A stretch of DNA of 54,541 nucleotides, filler included, from Bipalium vagum (Eukaryota): NCBI GenBank assembly GCA_037834085.1. It is 2 parts of 2 records of this genome, joined end to end, with 100 filler letters (N's around TTAATTAATTAA, not from the genome) between each part and the next. Parts side by side here need not be neighbours in the genome. Positions count along the whole stretch, not along the records: positions 1 to 24,456 come from JBBMKC010201052.1; 1 more part is not named here. One strand, given 5' to 3'. The position numbers and the translations under genes were made by a program. Under the pieces are notes generated by a model that saw only the letters and a program-made list of their open reading frames with translations, had not been told where the DNA came from and ran no database searches. This document shows, piece after piece, positions 167-20,788 of the stretch (positions are counted from its first letter, which is position 1; each line of letters opens with the position of its first letter).

Positions 167-658
167 GTGAATGCAGTAAGGAGTGACAGAGATGCTTTTA
201 AAAGGAAGGTAACACAAAACCATGACACCAGAATACCATCATTTAAAGGAAGACAAATAGCAAGAGAAAATATTAAATTTTATGGATGTAATAAGGAGGG
301 TCATTTAAGTCGTAATTGTACGGCAAGAAGACAAATAGAATGCTGGACCTGTTCGAGTCAGGATCACATTAGCAGGGATTGTCCAAAAAAGAAATCTCAA
401 GTATGCTTCGGATGTCAGACAGATGGTCATATTAGGAGAAATTATCCAAATATAACCTGTAGGCGGTGCAACAGGAACGGGCATAGTGAAAGGGAATGTT
501 ATACCAACCTTCACGATGGTAGGAGTTTTCAAGCACAGAGGACCAGAGGTCCAGAGAAAGTTTATAGAAGGGATAATTTAAATGCTTTAGAAGAGGAAGT
601 TGACGGTGATAGACTGGTCGAATACGAAGTCAGTACCCGAAAGACAGGGCTCCGCTAG
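167..658 (+). pseudogene. gag: Gag C-terminal nucleocapsid region with four CX2CX4HX4C-type zinc knuckles
   Basis: FYGCNKEGHLSRNC, CWTCSSQDHISRDC, CFGCQTDGHIRRNY, CRRCNRNGHSEREC. The first and third have each lost one Cys. Confidence 0.85.
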
Positions 659-879
659 TTTGGGAGTTAGTAGGAGCCTTATATTTAACGTCGTCAGCGA
701 TGATTCCCAAAGGGGCACCCGGTGCAAAGAAGAAGAGTGGGCAAAAGTGTGGAAATTCATGAAGAATGACTTTAGTGATGTGGAGAATGATAAAGATGTG
801 GGAGCTGTGATTGAAGGAGGAGATTTCTTTATAACAGACAAAGTTATGAACGAAGACCAAGTATAACGGTAGAGATTCA

Positions 880-3110
880 AGGATAAAGATTCGAATGCTT
901 ATTAGATACGGGAGCTGGGGTCAGTGTGATGAGTAGGAATATTTTGAATAAGTTTAAAGACGTGGAAGTAGTGAGAAGTAATGGCAGATTAATGTGTGCG
1001 AATAATAGCCAATTGAAAATAGTAGGAAAATGCTCAATTTCGGTAAGAGTAGCAAATGAGTCAAAACTGGTGAACTTTACAGTAGTAGAGGAAGTCACAC
1101 CGGATTTAATCAGCGGAATAAATCTTCAGAAGGTATTCGGATTTAGGTTGGTTAAAGAGAATGCTGGGCAGATCAAAACTGATGGAAAGAAAAGAGAAGA
1201 ATCATATATGTGTAATATTGAAGGGACGTTTGGTAATAGAGTTAAGGAAGGGGAGCGTTTTAAGAGAGCAGTAGAGCTAACAGGAGTGACAAGCAACAAT
1301 CGGCTGGTGCAGATAATAAAAGAGAACGAGGGTGTTTTTATGGCCAACAAATGGGATGTCGGCTGCACTCACCTAGCGAAACATTATATCCGGACAACAG
1401 AAGAACCGATTAATCTTAAGCCGTTTAGACAGCCAATGAACCTAGAGGAGAAGATACAAGATACAGTCAAGAACCTATACGACAATGGAATTATTAAGAA
1501 ATGCAATTCACCTTGGAATACACCGTTCATTTGCGTATTGAAGAAGAAGAAAGATATCCGCATATGTTTAGATTTTCGTCAGTTAAATGCAGTGACAGAA
1601 AGGCAGGCATTTCCGATGCCAAATGTTGATGAAATGTTGGATGCCTTGGGTGGGGCAAAGTATTTTAGCTCTATTGATTTAGGTAATGCTTATTATCAAG
1701 TGGAATTAAAGGAGGCATCAAAGATCAAGACGGCTTTTTCTACCAAGGAAGGAAAATATTGTTTTAATAGGATGCCCTTTGGAATAGCGGCAGCTCCAGG
1801 CACATTTCAGGAGAAGGTCGTCGGTGTTATAAAAGGAGCAATGGTCTATCTGGACGACATATTAGTTTTTACGGGGACTGAAAGTTGGTATTATAAGGTT
1901 CTGAACGAAGTACTGAGAAGAGTGCGCGAAGCTGGACTAAGGATAAATCCAGAAAAGTGTCATTTACTGAAAGAGGAAATAGAGTTCTTGAGTCATGTGG
2001 TGAGTAAAAAGGGGATAAAGACAGACCCTTCAAAGTTGGAGGCGAATTAAAATTTCGAAAGGTCAAAATGTTTAAAAAGATTGAAAAGTTTTTTAGGGAT
2101 CTGTAACTATTATAGAAGATTTATAAAAGAATACTCGAAAAGATCTAGGCTCTTGGAGAAAGCGTGTGGAAAGAGTGAGAAAAAAGTAATATGGACACAT
2201 GAGATGGAAGAAGCGTTCAAGGAGATGAAAAAGGCATTAACATCAAGAACCGTATTGTGTTTCCCCGATATTAAGAAGGAATTTAATCTAGACACAGATG
2301 CGAGTTTTGCTTCGATACGAGCAATTTTGTCTCAACTGGACGAAAATGGAAAGGAACGAGCGGTACCATATGGCTCTCATGCCATGAGCACCCATTAAAT
2401 TGGCTACTGTGTTACTCGAAAGGAATTGCTGTAAATTAATTTTTTTTGTAATCACTTTCAACATTATTTATATGGAAGGAGATTCAGACTGAGCACGGAT
2501 CATAAAGCAATCACCTTCATGATGAGTACGAAGAAGCCGATCACGTCGCAATTCCAAACGTGGATTAATTATTTGAACAGTCTGGACATTTGTTTGGTAG
2601 TCCCAAGACTATCAATGTGGATTGCACAAAAACATTTGAGTCAAAGAAGATGACAGAGTTCGCGAAAAGTATAAATTCGGAACTGCGGTTCTCAAGTCCA
2701 TACCACCATAACACTAATGACCAGATTGAACGACAATTTAGAACTATTATGGAGAGACTGAATGCAGCTAGAGCGGAGCAAGGAAGGAAGGATTGGGAAG
2801 AACTATTGTCAGAGGTCGAGCTCTCATTGAATGCAACAACGCAGAAGACGACAGGGAGGAGCCCCACAGAAATTATTTTTGGCAGACGCATTGACCGAGA
2901 AAGATGGTATCCATCGAGAGAGAAGGTGGATGGAACGGAAGTGGAATCGATGACGAAAAGTAATTTTGAAGTTGGTGACAAAGTCCTGGTCAAAGTGGAA
3001 ACGAGGAACTAAGGTCCATATCGAATCCAAAGAAAAATACATGGAAGACGGTATTTGATAGAACACGCAGATGGAAGAATTCTGGAGAGGAACGTTGAGA
3101 AGTTAAAAAA
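880..3110 (+). pseudogene. pol: Disrupted pol (protease, RT, RNase H, truncated integrase)
   Basis: Motifs as above, split over several frames. The RNase H end (WINYLNSLDI, ~2561-2590) is fused directly to mid-integrase. Confidence 0.93.
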
Positions 3111-4103: not shown

Positions 4104-5203
4104 TGTATAAATGGATAAAACCCCAGGACCTAGATCCTCGTTTTTTACTCGTTCAAAAACTCGGCCTATAAATCCAGAGTTTTTTTATTTATTACTATTA
4201 TACTTAAAGAAAGTAACCTCAAAAATCAACAACTCATCACTATCAGATGTATTCGTTTTACTATTGTAGCGGTACAAATTTACACTCTAAGTGAATCAAA
4301 ACTCCCACAATAATACTTATTCGCACCCTAAAATTGAATCAAAATGATCACGATATATCTTTATTGAATACTGCAAAACAATCGTTACACTCGTCGTAAA
4401 ATCACAATCAAAATCGTCAAAGATCTAAAAATCAATAATCGAAATTATCCAAATGTCTCAAAATTAAAACCGTTCAATAATCTGAAAATCAAACAAAAAC
4501 AAACACAAATAATCCAAAATCACAAATTCAAGATGATATGAATAAAATGAAATTAATATTAATAATAAAAATAAAGAAAATAAAACAAAATTGTAAATAC
4601 TCTCATCAGGAGAGATAAGGGGTCCCCGGGTTGTCCTCTAGGTCCTTTTCAGGTCACCTAGGGATTCCCAAACTCATTGGGCGCTTTTGTGAAATCCATT
4701 TGCATAATCATAGCGAGTAAATCAAAAAAAGAATTACTAAGCCTGAAAAATTCCTCTTCTGAATCTGATCCGTGCTGTAGCTCTTGAAACCTTCTGAATA
4801 ATTCTCTTCGTTAAAATTATATTCCACTTCTGAATCTGATGAATAACTGACTGATATCCTTCTTCTGACGATAATCACTGATTTTTGGTCGACGGCTATT
4901 ACTCCTTTTTTATTTTTCTGGGAATTGTCGTCTCTTAATATAGTCGTAGAGATTTGTCTACTATCCCCAATCCCTACGACTCGAGAAGACTATTTCCATC
5001 AATAAACATTTATCGACGTGGAGACAAAGTTAGACAAAGGAGAAAAGCGATCACTCCGACGACTCAGCTCATTCATCATGATCCTCATCAAATTACGTCA
5101 ACGCCCCTAATCTCCAATTCAGTACATCAAAGTGTTAATGCCGAGACTTTGATGTATCACTCATGAAAATTTGATCACCAAAAATTTTCAAGATTAATTA
5201 CTA
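4104..5203 (-). repeat. Interspersed non-coding repeat, possible solo LTR, copy 1
   Basis: Reverse complement of 51406-52095 over ~4187-4670 and ~5015-5200. A diverged piece is at ~40480-40550. Abuts (ATT)n. Confidence 0.75.
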
Positions 5204-5206
5204 TCA

Positions 5207-5207
5207 C

Positions 5208-5274
<67 letters not shown>
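5207..5274. repeat. (ATT)n microsatellite
   Basis: Direct tandem repeat. Confidence 0.97.
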
Positions 5275-5275
<1 letters not shown>

Positions 5276-5420
5276 CTTTTATTATTAATTTTAATAATTA
5301 CCACTATCGAGTTATGTGCCTTTGGCCAACCCAAATGTATGTATTTTCAAAAATCAAATCAAAAAGAAAAAATCGTTAAAAAAGTAATTAACAAGAAAAT
5401 CATTTATTGGTTTGATGTAT

Positions 5421-8910: not shown

Positions 8911-9109
8911 ATAAATATAATACATAATGTAACTGAACGATAAATTGTGTTCTTTTCCTAAAAATATCTTTTATTTCTACTTTAATGTAAAAGTTAATGT
9001 GACCAAACTACTTAAACAAATGATATTCTAAGTTGGAATACATCCGTTACAAATTTAATAATATAATTATCAACTAAACATTAATACTAATTATAATTAA
9101 TTTGGAGCA

Positions 9110-9265
9110 AAAGGTTGTCAAATGTTCAGTTTTAGTAATGGCACTTTGGAGTGATGGGTGTTTTATGGTCTACAGGTGTGTTTTCTCGTAAAAACCAACC
9201 TGTTGACCCCTCCACAACGTGATGCATATCACGTAAAGATATGTCAGCGTTTGAATGTCTTTCTT
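9110..9265 (-). pseudogene. 3' fragment (B') of a paralog of the gene at 19870-20788
   Basis: Reads DIQTLTYLYVICITL(frameshift)GSTGWFLREN...PITPKCHY* against DVQTLANLFGICITLRQGSTDWFIREN...SITPKCRY* in B. Both share TACTAAAACTGA across the stop. Confidence 0.85.
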
Positions 9266-10110
9266 CTTGTATCCGTCTCTTTTCTAAATAAACGGGTCTT
9301 TGACCTCTTTTTCTATTTCTCTTCTTTGATAATAACATCGGGAAATGACAGCTTGTCACCTTTCCTATCTCCGTTGTGAATTTGATATTTTCTCGAAGAA
9401 TTTCCATGAATGTAAGACAGCATCGATGTCTTTTTTACTCTCCAATATTAAGAAGACGTTCTCAACATATCTTTCCTAGCCCAGTGACTTACTTCCTTGA
9501 TGTTTTCCAAATTTCATTTCCAAGTAATCCATGAATACTGATGACTGTGTTGGTCCCAGTTAAGATATATATAACATTTACACAAGATAAAATGTAACAG
9601 TTTAAGACCCAGGCATCTCACTTGTGACATATCTTTGACGCTCCTTCAAAAAAACCGACAAGAACGTAATTTTATCCTCCATAGTCAAAAGAGGGTGGTC
9701 TCTTATTCTGCAGAGAAATAAATAAAGATGGCCGTCTCTCAAGATTGCAGGGATCTGAGTAAAGTGAATAAATAATTTATGGAAGTCTGATTCATTAATA
9801 AGTTGAGAAGGGAAACCATAAAAAATTTCCATAAAGATTTGGATCTAACAGACTCAAATATGGTTCTGATTGATGGGCAGTTGGTTTGATGGGTAAATAT
9901 TTCTTAGCTTCAGCTCCTTTTTAAGGATACTGAATGCCATCATAAGCATTTCAACTACCAAAGTGACGATGCAATATTTCCATTAAAACCTCTGCCTCTA
10001 ATTTCTGAATCAGCCAAAATGATGACATTCAAAGAGACCTTGTACTATTTTAGTTCAGTTGTCCGTGAGATCTACATGGTGCTTCTTAAAATATCAATAG
10101 TGATCCTTTA
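9266..10110 (-). mobile_element. Penelope-like retroelement RT remnant
   Basis: Minus-strand LGPTQSSVFMDYLE, KRYVENVF (decayed RYVDD) and ENIKFTTE...KLSFPDV (IKFTxE...LPFLD type). Confidence 0.65.
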
Positions 10111-10257
10111 AGCAAAGGAATAATACAAGTTCTAAATAATAATAATAACAATGAAAACAGTCTTATTAAGAATCAAATATTAAGGACAAAACTTGACGTT
10201 TAAAAAGTAATTTTCTCCTGCTAATGTCTCACAGGGTCCAGCGTTCATTCATCCACT

Positions 10258-11116
10258 TTAGGTTTTTATGTCGTCACATTCTCCTTCTGCTAAGTCAATG
10301 TTGACAGACGTTTTCGATGATGTTATACTAATTCCAAAGAGATTTGCCAAATTTCGAGTTCCGGACTGTCCTCCTTTGACATTAAACCCTCCATGCAATA
10401 CGAAATGCCAGTCGTTTCTTTCCACATGTCTCTGAAGATCTCCAAAATTTAAAGAAAACTCACCTTTAATCTTAAAAACTTTATTTTTCTCGCCATCGTG
10501 CGACTTAAATTCAGTAACGATATACATACAGTCATTTGTGTTCTTGCAAGCTCCGTTTGTCAGTATTTCAACAAAAATGTCCATCAAATTCTTCTTAGGC
10601 TCCGGTAAAGAGACAGCAATCATTCTACTCTTTCGGTACGAACCGAAAAGAAGTATACTCACATTGATTTTGTTTTTCAAAATTACAGTTGCTTTCACTG
10701 CGTCTGCAACACTAAACACTGTTGACATTGCAGAACTTTTCAAGCTGGGAACAGTTTTCAGCACTTTACAGCGTATGACATCAACATCAGAAGGTGACTG
10801 GAAAAAAAGGATTTAAAAGCGTAATGTGTAAAGAAGTTCTTACAACTTTGACGGGTCTCCTTCTGACAAAAATCTTTTCAGTGACACACAAAAACTTAGA
10901 TTGATCACTCTCCTGAGATGGATAAAACAGTCACAAAGACTTGTTCTCATCAAATCGGAATGCTTTGCAATCGGCCAAGTCGCATTTGAGAGAACACTCA
11001 ACTGCAGAACGAAGTGTCAGATTGAGGACGGGCTTGGCGACACAGGATTGAATGGCTCCGAAAGTATTGTTCGCCTCAACATTGATCACGGAAACGAAAA
11101 TTAACGTGAGAAACAT
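10258..11116 (-). pseudogene. Secreted PAN/apple-like domain protein, copy A' (exons 11116-10844 and 10797-10258), with an in-frame TGA at 10931-10933
   Basis: Signal peptide MFLTLIFVSVINVEA, then SAVECSLKCDLADCKAFRF. 46-bp phase-0 GT-AG intron. Exon 2 is fully open. The TGA aligns with TGC (Cys) in copy A. Confidence 0.75.
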
Positions 11117-11283
11117 TTGAAAAGTGTTTCCAAACTATAAATGACTTTCATATTTATCAGTGAAATTAGTCGTGCTAAACTTTCATTGGTCCACAAGATT
11201 GGATAGCGAAAATAATGTGTGCATCCATTCGGGTTGGAAGAGACACGTGGAATAGTCTCAGCATCAGACAAGGCTACCAGAAA
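10766..11283. repeat. Left arm of ~0.5 kb inverted repeat (partner 15106-15622)
   Basis: Near-identical reverse complement covering promoter, exon 1, intron and the first codons of exon 2. Confidence 0.95.
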
Positions 11284-11325
11284 TAAAGATTAATGTGAAA
11301 AGAATAATATATGACAAAATATGAA

Positions 11326-11362
<37 letters not shown>
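11326..11362. repeat. (AAT)n microsatellite
   Basis: Direct tandem repeat. Confidence 0.9.
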
Positions 11363-11364
<2 letters not shown>

Positions 11365-11499
11365 CTGAGAATTATCAGTTTTTTAATATTAACAATTCCC
11401 AGAAGCCACTTTCAAAAGACGAAAAGAGAAATAATTTATGATGCATTTTTATGTGATAAACCAATTGATCTTTGAGCAACAGATCATAAAAAAGATATT

Positions 11500-12480
11500 T
11501 GCAAAAATATAATTTTAATTTTTTTTGAAGTGGTCCCTTTTGGTTTGATTCACAGTTTCAAGCGTTTCTTGAAATTCTCAGCTATGGGAAGTATCATTTC
11601 CGGCTATATAGTGTACAATTCTTGGCATAAGTATTGTTTCAGTGACTAAGCTGTTGTGACGTTTACTACAGACTCTAGCTTCCAAAATTAACCATACTCT
11701 ATACTCCATTGAATTGAGATCCGGTGAGTACGGCGATCTTTTTTGAAACGTGATAAATTCCGAAAAATTGGCTTTGCATAACTCTTCCAAAGTGTTTACT
11801 TTGTGGGGCGGATCTCAGATGTTTATTGATGATTGCCGAAGTGTTTTTGAGATCAGAGAAGTGCTTCGACATCAAGGATCAGGCGTGTGTATATTTCTTG
11901 ATTGATTTTGACGCCTTCATCAATGAAGTTGATTTTGCTGATTGCACAGATTTCACCCCATACCACAAGGGAAAGCGGGTTTTGACAGCCTGCTCAACGG
12001 TGAATTTCCCCTCGTCTGTGAAGAGTATTTGTTCCTATTTGCTTTTGGAGCTCCAGTTTATGACATCCATTAATTCTTAGGAACTTATTTCTCTCCGTGA
12101 AGAAACTGAACTATTTAGATCTTGTAAGACTTGTACTGAATCTCATTTTTAGCAATTAGTCGAGCTGATTGACGCTTAAGTTCTGTTTTACGAGCTGTCT
12201 TCCGCATTGAAGTCTTTGAATTACGTTGAAGAAACTTATAGATGATTTTTCAATTTGGATTAGTTCGATTTTAACTGTTCTCGTTCTGCCACTTTCTGGA
12301 CGTTTTCCAATTTTTCCAAGATTTTCACATCGTTTTATCGATCCCCTAACGTTAGGAAAAGCAATTGTGAGTGTTTTAGCAATATCAATATTGCGAAATC
12401 TTTGTTCGTGCAAGACAACAATATTTTCTTGGTGAGCGCTCATTGATAACGGGTGATCGTTTTAATGTGAAAACTATTTA
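11500..12480 (-). mobile_element. Degenerate Tc1/maT-like transposon, near full length
   Basis: N-terminal HTH MSAHQENIVVLHEQ...SGRTRTV (12156-12443) and C-terminal SPYSPDLNSMEYRVWLILE (11578-11790). Confidence 0.85.
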
Positions 12481-12681
12481 CACATTCATCATCCATTTAA
12501 TAAACACATTTCAAATTTTACCTAGAAAAAAACTAAAATCAACGTATTAAAACTAAATAAAATTATTTATCACTTTGTCTTGTGATAATAATAATAAAAA
12601 TATTATTAATATTAATTAGTACTTCAAAGCATCCAAAGTTTTATAATAACAAATCTATTTAAAGAAAAAGTTGTGGAGCCT

Positions 12682-12893
12682 ATTTATTGTTTTTGCTTAA
12701 AGAGAAAATTGGATTCGAGAAGGAACCCGGGGCCTTTGTCTTTTACACTAACGACAATAAATGCTTTGCAAAACGCTGAGGCTCTGTTTCCCATTGCTTT
12801 CAAGCAAAATAAAGCATTGTTTCTCTAAATGAGAGTGTGAGACAAAACTTTTTCAAAGGTTTCCTTGGTTCTATTGAACAGTTTTCTGTCACT
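12682..12893 (+). repeat. ~200 bp direct repeat (partner 14322-14517)
   Basis: Both copies share TTTGCTTAAAGAGAAAATT...GAGGCTCTGTTTCC...CTATTGAACAGTT. Confidence 0.85.
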
Positions 12894-13459
12894 GTAATAT
12901 CGATCTGCTGAAATGATGTCATAGAAAGGGAAGTTGAAAGAAACATTAGACCCCAAAGAGACCTAATTATAACACTGGAAATTGGAAAAAGGAGAACAGA
13001 GAGAGCATTCAAAATAAAAACTTTCATTTAGAAAGTTAAAAGTCAAAGCAGAATGAAACATGAACGATACGAGTGAGAATAAACAAGACCAGCACTCACC
13101 TCTACGTTTAAATCTAAAAAGTGTTGTTCATCTTTTATAATGTAAAAATATTATATAAAAATATGTAAAGTTTTCAAAATAAAATTAAATTTAAACAGAA
13201 ATTCCATTTCAAAATCACCATGGCAACCAGAAATGACCAATGGCGTATTGTGCATTTTTACATATTTGTTTAAATAATATTTATCACGTCAAAAGATAAG
13301 CACAATTTCAAATATTGATTCGATTCTAAATAGTTCAAGTTGCAGGGAATTCCATTTGAAGTAATCCTCAGACGATATCAGATCTTTACGAGAAATGTCG
13401 AAAGTGAGCAAATTAAGTGGTCATTTATCGAAATGTGCACAGTTACCAAGGTAGGGCAA

Positions 13460-13760
13460 AATTCTCTATTGTGCTCATTTTCAGTAACTCGCTTTCTGGT
13501 GAAAGGCTTCTTTTGGTAATACACCATTTAATGACCATGGAACACTTTCAAATGAAAGAACGAAGATTATCAAAAAAGGAGGCTCAACAATGTAAAAATT
13601 AGGTAAATGCTGTCGCTCATGAGTCGAAATTCGCTCAGGGTTTATGTCAGACTTTTATTGCAGCAGACTCTCCATTGTTCAGATAACGGAATTAGGCCTA
13701 CAACCATTTTGAAAAAATATACAGAATTCCTTCGGGAACGACACTGCGATCGGAGTAAGT
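13460..13760 (+). mobile_element. hAT/CGGBP1-like transposase fragment (inverted partner ~14600-14830)
   Basis: FAQGLCQTFIAADSPLFR resembles the hAT LCxAFVAADIPL motif. 13519-13687 is the reverse complement of 14602-14770. Confidence 0.6.
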
Positions 13761-15105
13761 AGGAAATTTTCAATCTGCTATCGATGACTGTTGCAAAAGA
13801 GCTTAGAAGACTGATGACAAAATCTCGGGGAAGAAAAACCGACTGATGATGCCAAAGACAAATTTAAATGAAGTGCAAATGTCAAACATTTCGACGGAGA
13901 TGGTCAAAGAGTGTTTTATGAAATAGTGTTGCTATTTTTAATCTAGGGACGATGAGTGACATTAGACACGCTGCAAAAAATATTTTTCGTGGATATCGTT
14001 AGGTGAACGATCATTAACATTTTGCTGATAAATTGACAATATTTAGTTTCAATGAGCCATTTTCAAAAAGTGGTGAGAAATAATTTGTGATGAACTTCGT
14101 CCTACAGAGGTTATCCATCTGCTGCAGAAATATTATTATTATCATTTTATATAAATAAATACAGTTTCATGATGACGTGTTCCCTGACTTTATAAATAGA
14201 AAGCAGGAAAGCTCTAACTTCATAAAACAGTATTTAGAGCAATAATAATAATAATAATCTTTTGTACACTATTCAAAGCTTCTTTATAATAAACTGATTA
14301 GGAGGAAAACACTTGGTAGTGTTTATTGTTTTGCTTAAAGAGAAAATTAGATTCGAAAGGGAACCCAGGGCTTTTGTCTCTCACACTAAGGGTAATATTT
14401 GCTTTGCAAAGCGTTGAGGCTCTGTTTCCTATTACTTTCAGGCAAAATAAAACATTATTTCTCCAAGGGAGAGCGTGAAGCAAAACTTTTTCAAAAATTA
14501 CCTTCTATTGAACAGTTCCAAGATCAATATTTCCAATATGCTCCGATCTCAGTGACGTATATTCTGTATATTTCTTCAAAATGGTTGTAGACCATCATTG
14601 TGTTATCTGAAAAATGGAGAGTCTGCTGCCATAAATGTCTCACATAAGCCCTGAGCGAATTTCGACTGTTTAGCGACAGCATTTACCGAATTTATACATT
14701 GTTAAACTTCTTTTTTTGATAATCTTCGTTCTTTCATTTGTAAGTGTTCCATGGACCTTAAATGGTGTATTTTTATAAAGGATCCTTTATAAAAATCGAT
14801 TTATTGCAAATCAGTACAATAGAGAATTGCAGAGGATTGCAGATCATTTTAAGGACGGAAAACAATCATCACTATCACAGTAAAAGTTGTTTTCAGTCTC
14901 CCATCCTCTGACATTGCAGCCGAAAAGGATATTCGTGATATACTCAGAAGATTAAAAATTTTCTCTTAGCAAGGTGAGATTTTACGGTGATCAAGGGTGT
15001 TTCTCTCCCATGGGTTTCAGAAACCTTTTCATGTTTTCCATTAGAAACACAAATATTCATCTTTCTCGTTCAATTTTTTCCACCTTTAAATCTCCTCGAA
15101 CTTCC

Positions 15106-15270
15106 TTTCTGGCAGCCTTGGCTGATGCTGAGACCAGTCCACGTGTCTCTTCCATCCTAACTGGACACACATTATTTTCGCTATCCAATCTCGTGAACCA
15201 ATGAAAGTTTAGCACGACTAATTTCACTGATAAATATGAAAGTCATTTATAGTTTGGAAACACTTTTCAA
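15106..15270 (+). promoter_or_regulatory. Putative promoter/5' UTR of gene A, duplicated upstream of A'
   Basis: CACGTG at ~15140, two CCAAT boxes (~15185, ~15198) and GATAAATA at ~15229. Conserved in the inverted copy. Confidence 0.45.
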
Positions 15271-16129
15271 ATGTTTCTCACGTTAATTTTCGTTTCCGTG
15301 ATCAATGTTGAGGCGAACAATACTTTCGGAGCCATTCAATCCTGTGTCGCCAAGCCCGTCCTCAATCTGACACTTCGTTCTGCAGTTGAGTGTGCTCTCA
15401 AATGCGACTTGACCGATTGCAAAGCTTTCCGATTTGATCAGAACAAGTCTCTGTGCCGGTTTTATCCATCTCAGGAGAGTGATCAATCTAAGCTTTTGTG
15501 TGTCACTGAAAAGGTTTTTGTCAGAAGGAAACCTGTCAAAGTTGTAAGACCGTCTTCATACATTATACTTTTAAATCCTTTATTTCTAGTTGCCTTTTGA
15601 TGTTGATGTCATACGCTGTAAACTGCAGAAAAATGATAAGGGCATAAAAAGTGATTTCAAGTCGACGGTGTATGATATTTCGGACGATATGAAAGCAGCT
15701 GTCATTGTGAAAGGTAAAGACAACGCGGTCCAAATTGTCCTAGGCACATATCAAAAGAGCAAGATGTTTGCAGTTTCCTTAATCAAATCTCATAAAAAGA
15801 TGTGGAATAATTTCGTTGAAATATTGACAGATGGAGCCTGCAAAATGTATACTAAATGTGCGCATGATGTATCTGAATATAAAACCCACGATACCAAGAA
15901 GAGCAAAGTGTTTCAGGTAGATGACAAGTCGTCTTTCGATTATGAAGATCTTCGACGTTTTGTGGAGAGAAACGACTGGCACTTCATATTGTACGGTGAA
16001 TTTAAACTTAAAGGACAGGAATCTCAAACTCAAAAATTGGCAAGTCTTTACGGAGTTCGTATAACGGCAACAAGGAAGACGACCAACATAGACTTCAATC
16101 CAAGTGACTGTAAGAATAATGAATCATAA
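15271..16129 (+). CDS. Secreted PAN/apple-like domain protein, copy A (exons 15271-15543 and 15590-16129; 270 aa)
   Basis: Hydrophobic signal peptide. ECALKCDLTDCKAFRF...LCRFY Cys pattern. The 46-bp GTAAG...TTCTAG intron joins the two ORFs in phase 0. Confidence 0.85.
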
Positions 16130-16799
16130 ATAGCTGATGAAAGTCATATGGACGCTGTGAGACATTGGTAATGGACTCTCTTGATCTCTAAATGTGTTAG
16201 TTGTTGTCTTAATATTTGATTATCAATAAATACTTCAGTCAAAACAGTCCTTTAAAAGTTTTACTTTCACTGATTTTGAAGAATGAAGAGTTTCCTTCAA
16301 ATTATGACATTATAAAAGTAAACCCAAATATTTCTATTTTGAATATTATGCACTCAAAATATATGTTAATTGGATTTTAGACAGAGATAAGTAAAAATTT
16401 ATGGTTCTTGGTGAAAAATTATGAAAAAATTACTCAGGGTCTTGAATGTCGCAGTAGTCTGATGTGTAGTCGGGTATCCATTCGAAGATTTACCTCTACC
16501 TCTTATGTTTTACATATATTTTGTGTGCTTTTATTAGAGGATCTAACTACCGATAGTGCCAGGTGTATTAATACTCGTCGACATCATTTTACAGGCACCG
16601 AACGTATTTCATAGTGCTCAAGTAATTTAATTAATATTACGTTTTCATTATAAGCTGTTTATGTGACAAATGGCATTCTGAATGGCACTGACCAAGCCTT
16701 CTTTAACATGTGACAATTACAAAATCCAGACACAAAACGAAACCAAAATTCTCTTTCCTTTTATAATATTTATATTTCAAAAATGTATTTTCAAGCATT

Positions 16800-19869: not shown

Positions 19870-20788
19870 ATGAACATTTTTCCTTTTCTACTGGCACTTT
19901 TAATTGTCAGTATCAAAGGCGACAGCTTCTACCTGGCAGTTCCATCCTGTGTGTACAAGGCGCAGGCCAACATCACCGTGATCTCTGCAATCAAGTGTGC
20001 AATCCAATGTGATCTGACTGAGTGCAAGGCTTTCCTATTCGATCCGGAGACCTCAAAATGTGTCCTGTACGAATTTCTCGAAATGTGCCAGTCAAACACG
20101 AATTGTGTCAATGCAACCGTATTTGTCAACAATCGATATAATGGGAAGGTGAGCGTGTTTTGATGATAACGATCATTGGTATTATTTTTTATAGTTTCAT
20201 TCTGCTGATTCCAATCCTCGATTCAAAATCTTGAAGGACATCAACGTAAGGTTAACCAGCGGCAATCCTTCGATTTTTGAGATTATAAATGGAGATCGGG
20301 CTAGTCCAATATTAACGGACAGAAAGAATAATATTATTATCGTGGAGGGATCTTATCAAAGTACGAGAATAATGATTTTCCCAAAGTGGGAATATGTCCG
20401 AAATTTCAACATCAGAAACGATACCTATGCCGTTTTGGCCAACAATGCAGTGCGATATTTGACCGGGGGAATGTGCAAGGATTATTTGCAATGTTATCAC
20501 TCAATTTTGAACTACACAAGATACGTTGAAGAGAATAATCTTGTCTTTGGTATTCTTGGAGCGGATCCAATAGACATGGATATCATGATGGAGAAAATGA
20601 GAACTCAAAATTGGCATTTTATAATTTCAGGCACTTTTGTTGGGGTCGGGGTGAAGAGGGACGTTCAAACGCTGGCAAATCTGTTCGGGATATGCATAAC
20701 TTTGAGGCAGGGATCAACCGATTGGTTTATACGAGAAAACATTTGTGTTAATGTCACCAAGTCTATCACTCCAAAATGTCGCTACTAA
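19870..20788 (+). CDS. Secreted PAN/apple-like domain protein, copy B (exons 19870-20148 and 20195-20788; 290 aa)
   Basis: Signal peptide MNIFPFLLALLIVSIKG, then SAIKCAIQCDLTECKAFLF...KCVLY. 46-bp phase-0 GTGAG...ATAG intron. Exon 2 shares G(S/T)Y, LTxGxCK, WHF and LAxL(F/Y)G with A and A'. Confidence 0.87.

What the first reader, a model, noticed from the sequence alone, without database searches (positions are those of the whole stretch)
10258..16230. Constant 5' module and variable 3' module in head-to-head paralogs A and A'
Seen: promoter, exon 1, intron and the first ~10 codons of exon 2 form a ~517 bp inverted repeat (10766-11283 vs 15106-15622), with a ~190 bp stretch that looks identical by eye. 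Identity drops abruptly after DVDVIRCK, and the exon-2 proteins are only roughly half identical although colinear. The 3' UTRs still share GGACxCTGTGAGACATT and CTTAATATTTGATT. Inference: gene conversion between the inverted arms homogenises the PAN exon and promoter while exon 2 diversifies. Crossover within the arms would invert the ~3.8 kb spacer and swap exon 1 and promoter between the two exon-2 variants, in a shufflon-like way.
Basis: partly seen in the sequence, partly recalled or inferred. Interest (0 to 1): 0.76.

Follow-up and report, generated by a model that had tools for sequence, protein, structure and literature searches.

The report
Partial gene conversion between inverted paralogs
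Two neighbouring, oppositely oriented copies of a secreted-protein gene have had their front ends copied onto each other by ordinary DNA repair while their back ends stayed old and different, and one of the two copies carries a premature stop.

Summary
The arms 10765-11283 (-) and 15106-15622 (+) are 93% identical and contain a perfect 197-bp run (10994-11190 = 15197-15393). Identity falls to 63% from 15623 onward. Synonymous divergence is 0.05 in exon 1 and 1.12 in exon 2; the 46-nt intron is 83% identical and the 3'UTR 65%. This is ectopic gene conversion between head-to-head paralogs left by an old inverted duplication. There were at least two events: an older one of about 520 bp, and a recent one of at least 197 bp.

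Copy A has an in-frame TGA at codon 62 of exon 1, replacing a PAN cysteine, so it is probably a pseudogene. The same 5' module also sits on a third copy on another contig (C52256, 92%). Another pair in the family shows the reverse mosaic, with exon 2 more alike than exon 1. Exon 2 has dN/dS 0.36, so diversifying selection is not shown.

The shufflon-like inversion has no support. There is no recombinase, each exon 2 has its own 5' module, and the only public run (short contigs) cannot test orientation.

This is a known kind of event in an uncharacterised family with at least 150 matches per exon in this genome. The scan had already noted this same stretch as s1-739611.

The parts
10258..10797 (-). 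Gene A, exon 2 (179 codons plus stop at 10260-10258); C-terminal domain of unknown family
   Evidence: The open frame and the AG acceptor at 10798-10799 were read. It shares 82 of 179 aa with A' exon 2. No Pfam family matched.
10798..10843 (-). Gene A, intron (46 nt, GT..AG)
   Evidence: Read. It is 38 of 46 identical to the A' intron.
10844..11116 (-). Gene A, exon 1 (hydrophobic N-terminus plus PAN); in-frame TGA at 10933-10931, codon 62, in place of Cys
   Evidence: The translation shows the stop. The mismatch A/C at 10931 / 15456 appears.
10765..11283 (-). Left arm of the homogenised 5' module (upstream 167 bp, exon 1, intron, first 11 codons of exon 2)
   Evidence: 93% identical to 15106-15622.
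10994..11190 (-). Perfect 197-bp tract, left copy (74 bp upstream of the ATG plus the first 41 codons)
   Evidence: No difference in the tract. Permutation gave 0 of 100,000.
11322..11364 (.). (ATT)n microsatellite about 40 bp outside the left arm; also present upstream of copy A2 on contig C52256
   Evidence: Seen.
11284..15105 (.). 3.8-kb spacer made of decayed dispersed repeats, with an internal inverted repeat at 13460-13770 / 14526-14828; no intact gene found
   Evidence: The own-genome DNA search found 52 matches at E <= 1e-20 out of 162 candidates. The only Pfam match is a sub-threshold DDE_3, E 0.052.
15106..15622 (+). Right arm of the homogenised 5' module
15197..15393 (+). Perfect 197-bp tract, right copy
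   Evidence: Copy A2 differs from it at 8 of 197 positions.
15271..15543 (+). Gene A', exon 1 (91 codons, intact), PAN domain
   Evidence: PAN_1 E 2.5e-5, 24.5 bits against a cut-off of 21.4.
15544..15589 (+). Gene A', intron (46 nt, GT..AG, phase 0)
   Evidence: Read. The frames of ORFs 15271.. and 15590.. join across it.
15590..16129 (+). Gene A', exon 2 (179 codons plus stop), intact
16150..16221 (+). A' 3'UTR with the two shared islands (16150-16166 and 16208-16221) and AATAAA at 16225-16230; the counterparts in A are 10239-10223 and 10184-10171
9056..9266 (-). B' remnant: mirror copy of the 3' end of gene B (context for the old inverted duplication)
   Evidence: blastn 72% over 219 nt to B; tblastn 57-58% over 21 and 26 residues.
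19870..20788 (+). Gene B (exon 1 19870-20163, exon 2 20231-20788), a distant member of the same family downstream of A'
   Evidence: PAN_1 scores 19.8 bits, below the cut-off.

Best explanation
A and A' are the two halves of an old inverted duplication of a two-gene block (B'<-A<- | ->A'->B). The family encodes small secreted proteins with two exons: a hydrophobic N-terminus plus PAN domain in exon 1, and an uncharacterised domain of about 175 aa in exon 2.

Long after the duplication, homologous repair between the head-to-head copies (ectopic gene conversion) overwrote about 520 bp in one copy with the other's sequence. That stretch covers the proximal promoter, exon 1, the intron and 11 codons of exon 2. 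The same module is on copy A2 on another contig. A, A' and A2 are about equally far from each other in the module, so this first event came before or around the time A2 arose.

A second, very recent conversion of at least 197 bp made A and A' identical from 74 bp upstream of the ATG to codon 41. The tracts stop where sequence identity is too low to carry a heteroduplex: exon 2 at 63% on one side, and unrelated sequence with an (ATT)n run on the other.

Shown: the block structure, the contrast in silent-site divergence, the perfect run and the third copy. Inferred: the order of events and the mechanism.

A then acquired, or kept, a nonsense codon 63 nt beyond the recent tract, and it is probably a pseudogene. 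No programmed switching is involved.
For: Breakpoints fall at 15106 and 15623, with identities 45 / 93 / 63%.

dS is 0.051 in exon 1 (3 synonymous and 7 nonsynonymous differences) against 1.12 in exon 2 after codon 11. The intron is 38 of 46 identical. The 3'UTR is 65 of 100 identical.

The perfect run is 197 bp: 0 of 100,000 permutations within the module and 0 of 20,000 over the whole gene reach it. A2 has 8 differences in those same 197 bp, so the tract is not frozen by constraint; Poisson P(0 | 8) = 3e-4.

In the exon-1 tree, A', A and A2 form one clade (100/99). In the exon-2 tree, (A, A2) at 100/100 and (A', A'2) at 100/99 are far apart, with a path length of 1.26 against 0.085 in exon 1.

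The excess of exon-1 over exon-2 identity is +0.46 for A'/A and +0.47 for A'/A2. In 88 other ingroup pairs the mean is +0.18, sd 0.09, maximum 0.35.

Only 4 places in the 440-Mb assembly carry the module at 86% or more. The other 20 matches are 74-80%.

Shared 3'UTR islands (found in 0 of 13 other tails) and the B' remnant show that whole genes were duplicated in mirror image.
Against: The exon-2 data do not reject a tree in which A, A2, A' and A'2 form one clade (AU p = 0.177). The discordance is therefore one of distances, not a proven conflict of topology.

Exon 1 is more conserved than exon 2 across the family as a whole (mean +0.18), so part of the contrast is ordinary constraint.

The direction of transfer is not resolved. 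Polarised by A2, there are 14 A-specific and 12 A'-specific differences. There is no clear GC rise in the module: 0.40 against 0.375.

The assembly is very fragmented (272,664 contigs). The only read set is probably the sample the assembly came from, and it is kept as short contigs, so the arms have no independent confirmation.
Confidence: 0.85

Rival explanations
1. One-step chimeric or partial duplication. A copy of the 5' module was pasted in front of a pre-existing, diverged exon 2, for example by template switching or unequal exchange. There was no repeated conversion between resident paralogs.
For: The older 520-bp block has sharp ends. The module is equally distant among A, A' and A2, which a single event before the A/A2 split would produce.
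Against: It does not explain the nested perfect 197 bp inside a block that is otherwise about 89% identical (36 differences in the other 327 columns). A' shares its upstream flank with A'2, and A shares its flank with A2, right up to the module, as expected for replacement in place. The outcome is hard to tell apart from a conversion.
Confidence: 0.07
2. Assembly artefact. In a short-read assembly of a family with hundreds of copies, reads of several paralogs were merged, so the arms look more alike than they are, or the spacer orientation is arbitrary.
For: The assembly has 272,664 contigs for 440 Mb. Logan contigs break at the repeat. Depth in the bin 15258-15457 is the sum over many paralog contigs. 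No independent run exists.
Against: The arms keep 36 private differences and distinct flanks. One Logan contig of 1,674 nt runs from the unique spacer (13553) 30 nt into the perfect tract (15226) with 0 differences. That is what a k-mer graph gives at a true repeat. A2 on another contig carries the same module at 92% with its own differences, and these are seen again in a separate Logan contig.
Confidence: 0.05
3. Selection alone. The promoter and the exon for signal peptide plus PAN are held by strong purifying selection while exon 2 evolves fast, without any recombination.
For: Exon 1 is on average 18 points more conserved than exon 2 in the subfamily. DV..IRCK at the start of exon 2 is conserved family-wide.
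Against: Silent sites differ 22-fold (dS 0.051 against 1.12), and the intron is 83% identical. Exon-1 dN/dS between A and A' is 0.67 and includes a stop codon, which is not the mark of strong constraint. Other paralogs are only 74-80% identical in exon 1 DNA.
Confidence: 0.02
4. Programmed or frequent inversion of the spacer (shufflon-like) that swaps promoter and exon 1 between two exon-2 variants.
For: Recombination between inverted paralogs does give inversions (PMC3449122, passage read). 197 bp of perfect identity is enough substrate for homologous recombination. Read laying reported one 'opposite strands' joint, 10391 to 16032.
Against: That joint comes from 1 contig with 35 letters on its shorter side. 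It joins points about 36 nt out of register in exon 2, outside the arms, so it looks like a paralog contig that matches A in one part and A' in the next. No recombinase is present: the spacer ORFs gave only DDE_3 at E 0.052, below the cut-off. Both exon 2s already own a complete 5' module, so an inversion would exchange near-identical sequence. No alternative junction contig exists in the assembly: the module is found at only 4 places, each in its one context.
Confidence: 0.01

Closest known systems
Ectopic (interlocus) gene conversion limited to part of a gene in a multigene family, e.g. zebrafish NLR-B30.2 genes (PMC4852459, abstract and passages read)
   Same: Different parts of the same genes give very different synonymous divergence. 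One domain is kept alike among copies while another is not. Tracts are shorter than the gene.
   Different: Here it concerns one pair plus a third copy, not whole groups. The homogenised part also includes the promoter and the intron. No positive selection is shown on the non-converted exon (dN/dS 0.36). One partner is broken.
Arm-to-arm conversion and inversion between inverted paralogs (non-allelic homologous recombination; review PMC3449122, passages read)
   Same: The copies are head-to-head a few kb apart, the arms are near-identical, and there is the potential for inversion of the spacer.
   Different: Only the inner 520 bp of the arms is homogenised; the outer parts (exon 2, 3'UTR) are at 63-65%. 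Inversion is not observed here.
Bacterial shufflons and invertible switches (recalled from general knowledge, no call)
   Same: Inverted repeats flank a DNA segment, and the variable part of the protein is C-terminal.
   Different: No site-specific recombinase is present. There is no single constant segment serving several promoterless cassettes. The organism is a eukaryote with spliced genes. See the membership test.
PAN/apple domain proteins (Pfam PF00024)
   Same: Exon 1 of A' scores above the Pfam cut-off (24.5 against 21.4 bits).
   Different: The attached C-terminal domain has no Pfam, PDB or Atlas match. A profile search of 1.84 billion proteins found only 37 relatives. In the 6 clusters looked up, the only names were TCAF or 'uncharacterised' for P0029's cluster, and P0028 has only a UniParc accession.

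Membership tests
Ectopic gene conversion tract | Abrupt change of identity at tract ends within otherwise homologous genes | tested here: met
   Likelihood breaks fall at 15106 and 15623, with identities 45 / 93 / 63%.
Ectopic gene conversion tract | Silent and non-coding sites are homogenised as much as coding sites | tested here: met
   dS is 0.051 against 1.12. The intron is 38 of 46 identical. The 74 bp next to the ATG are 100% identical; further upstream the arm falls to about 87%.
Ectopic gene conversion tract | The longest identical fragment exceeds the permutation expectation (GENECONV-type test) | tested here: met
   The run is 197 bp. It was reached in 0 of 100,000 permutations within the module and 0 of 20,000 over the whole gene.
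Ectopic gene conversion tract | Tree of the tract conflicts with the tree of the flanks | tested here: inconclusive
   In exon 1 the clade (A', A, A2) has support 100/99. In exon 2, A' groups weakly (84/85) with 6 other paralogs. The AU test does not reject {A, A2, A', A'2} as one clade, p = 0.177.
Ectopic gene conversion tract | Donor and recipient identified | tested here: inconclusive
   Polarised by A2, there are 14 A-specific and 12 A'-specific differences. At the 5' edge (15106-15134) A matches A' and A'2 at 89-93% in the 4-way alignment, but by eye A2 seems only to lack about 20 nt there.
Shufflon / invertible DNA switch | Site-specific recombinase encoded at or near the locus | tested here: not met
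   The spacer ORFs gave no family at E <= 0.01. The best match is DDE_3 at E 0.052, below the cut-off. The only integrase-like ORF (rve, E 0.0019, below the cut-off) belongs to a retroelement at 2590-3009.
Shufflon / invertible DNA switch | One constant promoter-bearing segment and several promoterless variable cassettes | tested here: not met
   Each exon 2 has its own upstream region, exon 1 and intron.
Shufflon / invertible DNA switch | Both orientations present in DNA of one population | not testable with these tools
   The one run is kept as contigs that end at the repeats. No piece spans an arm together with both of its flanks.
PAN/apple domain (PF00024) | Score above the Pfam gathering threshold | tested here: met
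   A' exon 1 scores 24.5 bits against 21.4. B exon 1 scores 19.8 bits, below the cut-off. In A the codon for one of the domain's cysteines is TGA.
Repeated N-terminal domain of TCAF / M60-like proteins, for exon 2 | Significant profile match over the whole domain | tested here: inconclusive
   The HMM profile hits a fish TCAF homologue at E 2.3e-9 in 4 stretches. hhalign gives a probability of only 58.6% over 77 of 187 columns.
Selenoprotein (TGA = Sec at a Cys position) | SECIS element in the 3'UTR | tested here: not met
   No SECIS match at E <= 5 anywhere in 9900-16500. The 3'UTR folds no better than shuffled sequence, z -0.34.

The most novel reading that the evidence does not exclude
Exchange of whole exon-sized modules is a recurrent, family-wide habit of this very large lineage-restricted secreted family, in either direction: 5' alike in A/A'/A2, 3' alike in C222330/C230950. 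The short conserved intron and the DV..IRCK junction would act as the usual switch point. On this reading new PAN-plus-domain combinations are made by germline recombination. At this locus a spacer inversion polymorphism could move the nonsense allele from one exon-2 variant to the other.
Probability: 0.07. Interest if true: 0.5.

Novelty: new member of a known kind. Interest (0 to 1): 0.25.

Why it matters
The case itself is a clean textbook example of partial gene conversion between inverted paralogs, with nested tracts of two ages. It has practical value for anyone annotating or dating this gene family. Exon 1 and exon 2 give different ages, so trees must be built per exon. Near-identical 5' ends can also mislead short-read assembly and expression counts.

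The family may be of more interest than the conversion. It has two exons (PAN plus an unknown domain), at least 150 scored matches per exon out of 572 and 680 candidates, and almost no relatives in public protein sets.

Tried and rejected
Identifying the exon-2 domain led nowhere firm.
- Pfam on single exons and on 18 paralogs gave nothing above threshold.
- The protein Atlas gave no usable hit.
- The word-index protein search gave 0 hits with A' exon 2. With a 25-row profile it returned only 2 sequences that were already in the profile.
- The PDB sequence profile gave nothing below E 0.3.
- The full HMM search found 37 proteins. In the 6 clusters looked up, the only names were TCAF or 'uncharacterised' for P0029's cluster. 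One fish TCAF homologue is a weak lead, with hhalign probability 58.6%.

Other negative or inconclusive checks:
- Topological conflict between exons was tested and not shown (AU p = 0.177).
- A signal of biased gene conversion was looked for and is not clear.
- The selenocysteine reading of A's TGA was tested and rejected.
- Expression could not be tested because no RNA run holds the stretch.
- Orientation and collapse could not be tested. The one run is short contigs, and its depth is summed over paralogs.
- The literature search for this PAN family returned 2 papers (nematode ZP modules, fungal genomes), listing only. Neither title nor abstract start concerns this family. I therefore claim only that this search found no description of it.
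- The organism was not identified. My guess that it is a nematode rests on the short 46-nt introns, the TTTCAG-type acceptors and a TGATAA motif. This is recalled knowledge and was not tested.
- The spliced exon 1 plus exon 2 protein was never joined for a search.
- I could not see the supplement of PMC4852459. Its dS and dN/dS figures (S4) would bear on how close that precedent is.

Full report
WHAT IS THERE

The window is contig C201052 of a 440.8-Mb assembly in 272,664 contigs. It is AT-rich, 26-41% G+C, and its genes have short spliced introns.

Two genes lie head to head. Gene A' is on the + strand:
- exon 1 at 15271-15543, 91 codons
- a 46-nt GT..AG intron at 15544-15589
- exon 2 at 15590-16129, 179 codons plus stop

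Gene A is on the - strand:
- exon 1 at 11116-10844
- an intron at 10843-10798
- exon 2 at 10797-10258

Exon 1 of A' has a hydrophobic N-terminus, which I read by eye as a signal peptide. It also has a PAN domain: PF00024, 24.5 bits against a cut-off of 21.4. Exon 2 has no Pfam family. All protein searches were made exon by exon, and the joined protein was not searched.

CHECK OF THE OBSERVATION

- A likelihood fit with two breakpoints puts the limits of the similar block at A' 15106 and 15623. Identities are 45% upstream, 93% inside and 63% downstream.
- The own-genome DNA search gives 10765-11283 at 93% to 15106-15622.
- Inside the block, 197 bp are identical without exception: 11190-10994 = 15197-15393, that is 74 bp upstream of the ATG plus 41 codons.
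- With 36 differences in 524 columns, 0 of 100,000 permutations reach such a run.
- The exon-2 proteins are colinear, with no gap, and share 82 of 179 residues.
- The two 3'UTR islands are present in both genes at nearly the same distance from the stop. They are absent from the 13 other tails I checked.

1. Exon 1 of A has an in-frame TGA at codon 62 (10933-10931), where A' has TGC for one of the PAN cysteines. No SECIS element or any other Rfam match supports a selenocysteine reading, and the 3'UTR does not fold better than shuffled sequence. A is most simply a pseudogene.

2. Two more copies lie on other contigs.
   - A2 (C52256) is 85% identical to A over 1,272 nt including the UTRs. It has a one-base insertion in exon 1 and a one-base deletion in exon 2.
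   - A'2 (C117883) is 85% identical to A' over 750 nt. It lacks the counterpart of 15135-15484 (promoter and most of exon 1) and 10 nt at the start of exon 2.
   - Of the four copies, only A' is intact.
   - C117883 also carries a B-like exon 1 downstream of A'2, so a larger block was copied.

3. The family is very large. At least 150 scored matches were found for each exon, out of 572 and 680 first-look candidates.

IS IT GENE CONVERSION?

Synonymous divergence between A and A' is 0.051 in exon 1 (3 synonymous and 7 nonsynonymous differences, plus the stop). In exon 2 after codon 11 it is 1.12. The intron is 38 of 46 identical, while the 3'UTR is 65 of 100. A 22-fold contrast at silent sites within 1 kb, shared by intron and promoter, cannot come from selection on the protein or from fast evolution of exon 2. 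It needs a transfer of sequence.

Exon 1 is generally the more conserved exon in this subfamily. The excess of exon-1 over exon-2 amino-acid identity has mean +0.18, sd 0.09 and maximum 0.35 in 88 other pairs. A'/A (+0.46) and A'/A2 (+0.47) lie well outside that range. Other paralogs are only 74-80% identical to the module in DNA.

In trees, exon 1 joins A', A and A2 (100/99). Exon 2 separates (A, A2; 100/100) from (A', A'2; 100/99), with a path of 1.26 against 0.085.

A result that limits the claim: the exon-2 data do not reject a tree with all four together (AU p = 0.177). A-type and A'-type may therefore well be sisters. The private 3'UTR islands and the mirror-image remnant of gene B (9056-9266, 72% to the 3' end of B) suggest the same. 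The conflict is one of age, not of proven topology.

HISTORY, INFERRED

1. An old inverted duplication of an A-B block, with dS about 1.
2. Homogenisation of about 520 bp at the 5' ends.
3. Origin of A2 and A'2. In the module's flanks A, A' and A2 are about equidistant: 84-91% in 15485-22 for all four copies, and 14 A-specific against 12 A'-specific differences when polarised by A2. Event 2 therefore came before or around event 3.
4. A recent conversion of at least 197 bp between A and A'. A2 differs at 8 of those 197 positions, so the identity is not due to constraint; Poisson P = 3e-4.

The nonsense codon lies 63 nt beyond the recent tract. Direction is unresolved. There is no clear GC excess in the module, 0.40 against 0.375.

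IS 'CONSTANT 5', VARIABLE 3'' A DESIGN?

Probably not.
- dN/dS in exon 2 is 0.36 for A/A', 0.62 for A/A2 and 0.24 for A'/A'2. This is purifying or relaxed selection, not diversifying selection.
- Two of 2 other head-to-head pairs that I looked at (contigs C263916 and C26662) have coding arms of uniform 73-77%. One of them has a 78-nt upstream stretch at 86%. Neither has a block of 90% or more.
- The pair C222330 / C230950 shows the reverse. Exon 2 is about 90% identical in DNA (85% aa) and exon 1 about 78% (73% aa), and the change falls near the intron.

Patchy exchange in either direction fits this better than a rule.

THE SHUFFLON IDEA

A crossover within the arms would indeed invert the spacer, as is general for inverted paralogs (PMC3449122, passage read). 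But several points stand against a switch:
- The spacer is made of decayed dispersed repeats: 52 matches at E <= 1e-20 elsewhere in the genome. Only a sub-threshold DDE_3 match was found, E 0.052.
- No recombinase is present.
- Each exon 2 already has its own complete 5' module, so nothing would be switched except 36 point differences, among them the stop.

The single public run is kept as short contigs that end at the repeats. A 1,674-nt contig runs from the unique spacer 30 nt into the perfect tract with no difference. This supports the right-hand junction of the assembly.

One 'opposite strands' joint (10391 to 16032; 1 contig, 35 letters on the shorter side) lies in exon 2, about 36 nt out of register. 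I read it as a paralog contig that matches A in one part and A' in the next, not as an inversion. Orientation, assembly collapse and expression remain untested.

COMPARISON WITH WHAT IS KNOWN

Domain-limited gene conversion in multigene families is well described. In zebrafish NLR-B30.2 genes, for example, NACHT and B30.2 show different synonymous divergence (PMC4852459, abstract and passages read).

This case is a new instance of that kind, with nested tracts and a broken partner. The family itself is close to unknown. The word-index searches found nothing new. The full HMM search of 1.84 billion representatives found 37 proteins. Of the 6 clusters looked up, four are unnamed singletons from ENA or Logan. 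One is a 291-aa UniParc entry.

VERDICT

The gene-conversion inference is supported, with confidence 0.85. Diversification of exon 2 is not shown. The shufflon reading is not supported.

This is an ordinary mechanism, and the interest is 0.25. The scan had noted this same stretch before (s1-739611, mirror-image cluster) and the family elsewhere in the genome (s1-735078).

Noticed in passing
window 10931-10933 (-): In-frame TGA in exon 1 of A at a position where A', A2 and the family have Cys (TGC). No SECIS element was found, so A is probably a pseudogene.
   Followed up: yes
L015 (C52256:1-1300) and L002/L043 (C117883:3821-4788): There are further copies A2 and A'2, each about 85% identical to A and A'. 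Both are broken: A2 by two frameshifts, A'2 by a 350-bp deletion of promoter and exon 1 plus a 10-nt deletion. C117883 also has a B-like exon 1 downstream of A'2. It is open whether these are a duplicated block or a very divergent haplotype.
   Followed up: partly
L005 (C222330:108-974) and L009 (C230950:1231-2086): A reverse mosaic: exon 2 is about 90% identical in DNA (85% aa) but exon 1 only about 78% (73% aa), and the change falls near the intron.
   Followed up: partly
window 11400-12600; also 12600-13120, and 13460-13770 / 14526-14828: The spacer consists of decayed dispersed repeats with many copies in the genome. One ORF (11581-11790, -) has a sub-threshold DDE_3 match (E 0.052). The pair 13460-13770 / 14526-14828 is an internal inverted repeat at 82-89%.
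   Followed up: partly
window 167-3012 (+): ORFs of an LTR-type retroelement: zinc-knuckle gag (zf-CCHC, E 1.5e-12), reverse transcriptase (RVT_1, E 3e-27), and an integrase remnant (rve, E 0.0019, below the cut-off).
   Followed up: no
window 11322-11364, and the start of C52256: An (ATT)n microsatellite sits about 40 bp outside the 5' limit of the module in both A and A2. A similar run lies at 5200-5290. It may mark where heteroduplex extension stopped.
   Followed up: no
window 15140-15260 and 11135-11250: The shared upstream region holds CCACGTG (an E-box-like motif), CCAAT, and CACTGATAA (a GATA-type motif) about 45 bp before the ATG. The motif names are recalled and were not tested.
   Followed up: no
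exon-2 domain, alignment A2; P0029: The N-terminal half of the unknown domain weakly resembles a repeated domain of fish TCAF (TRPM8 channel-associated factor) homologues: HMM E 2.3e-9, hhalign probability 58.6%.
   Followed up: partly
window 9056-9407 (-): B' is a remnant of a mirror copy of the 3' end of gene B (72% over 219 nt). It shows that the old inverted duplication covered at least two genes.
   Followed up: partly
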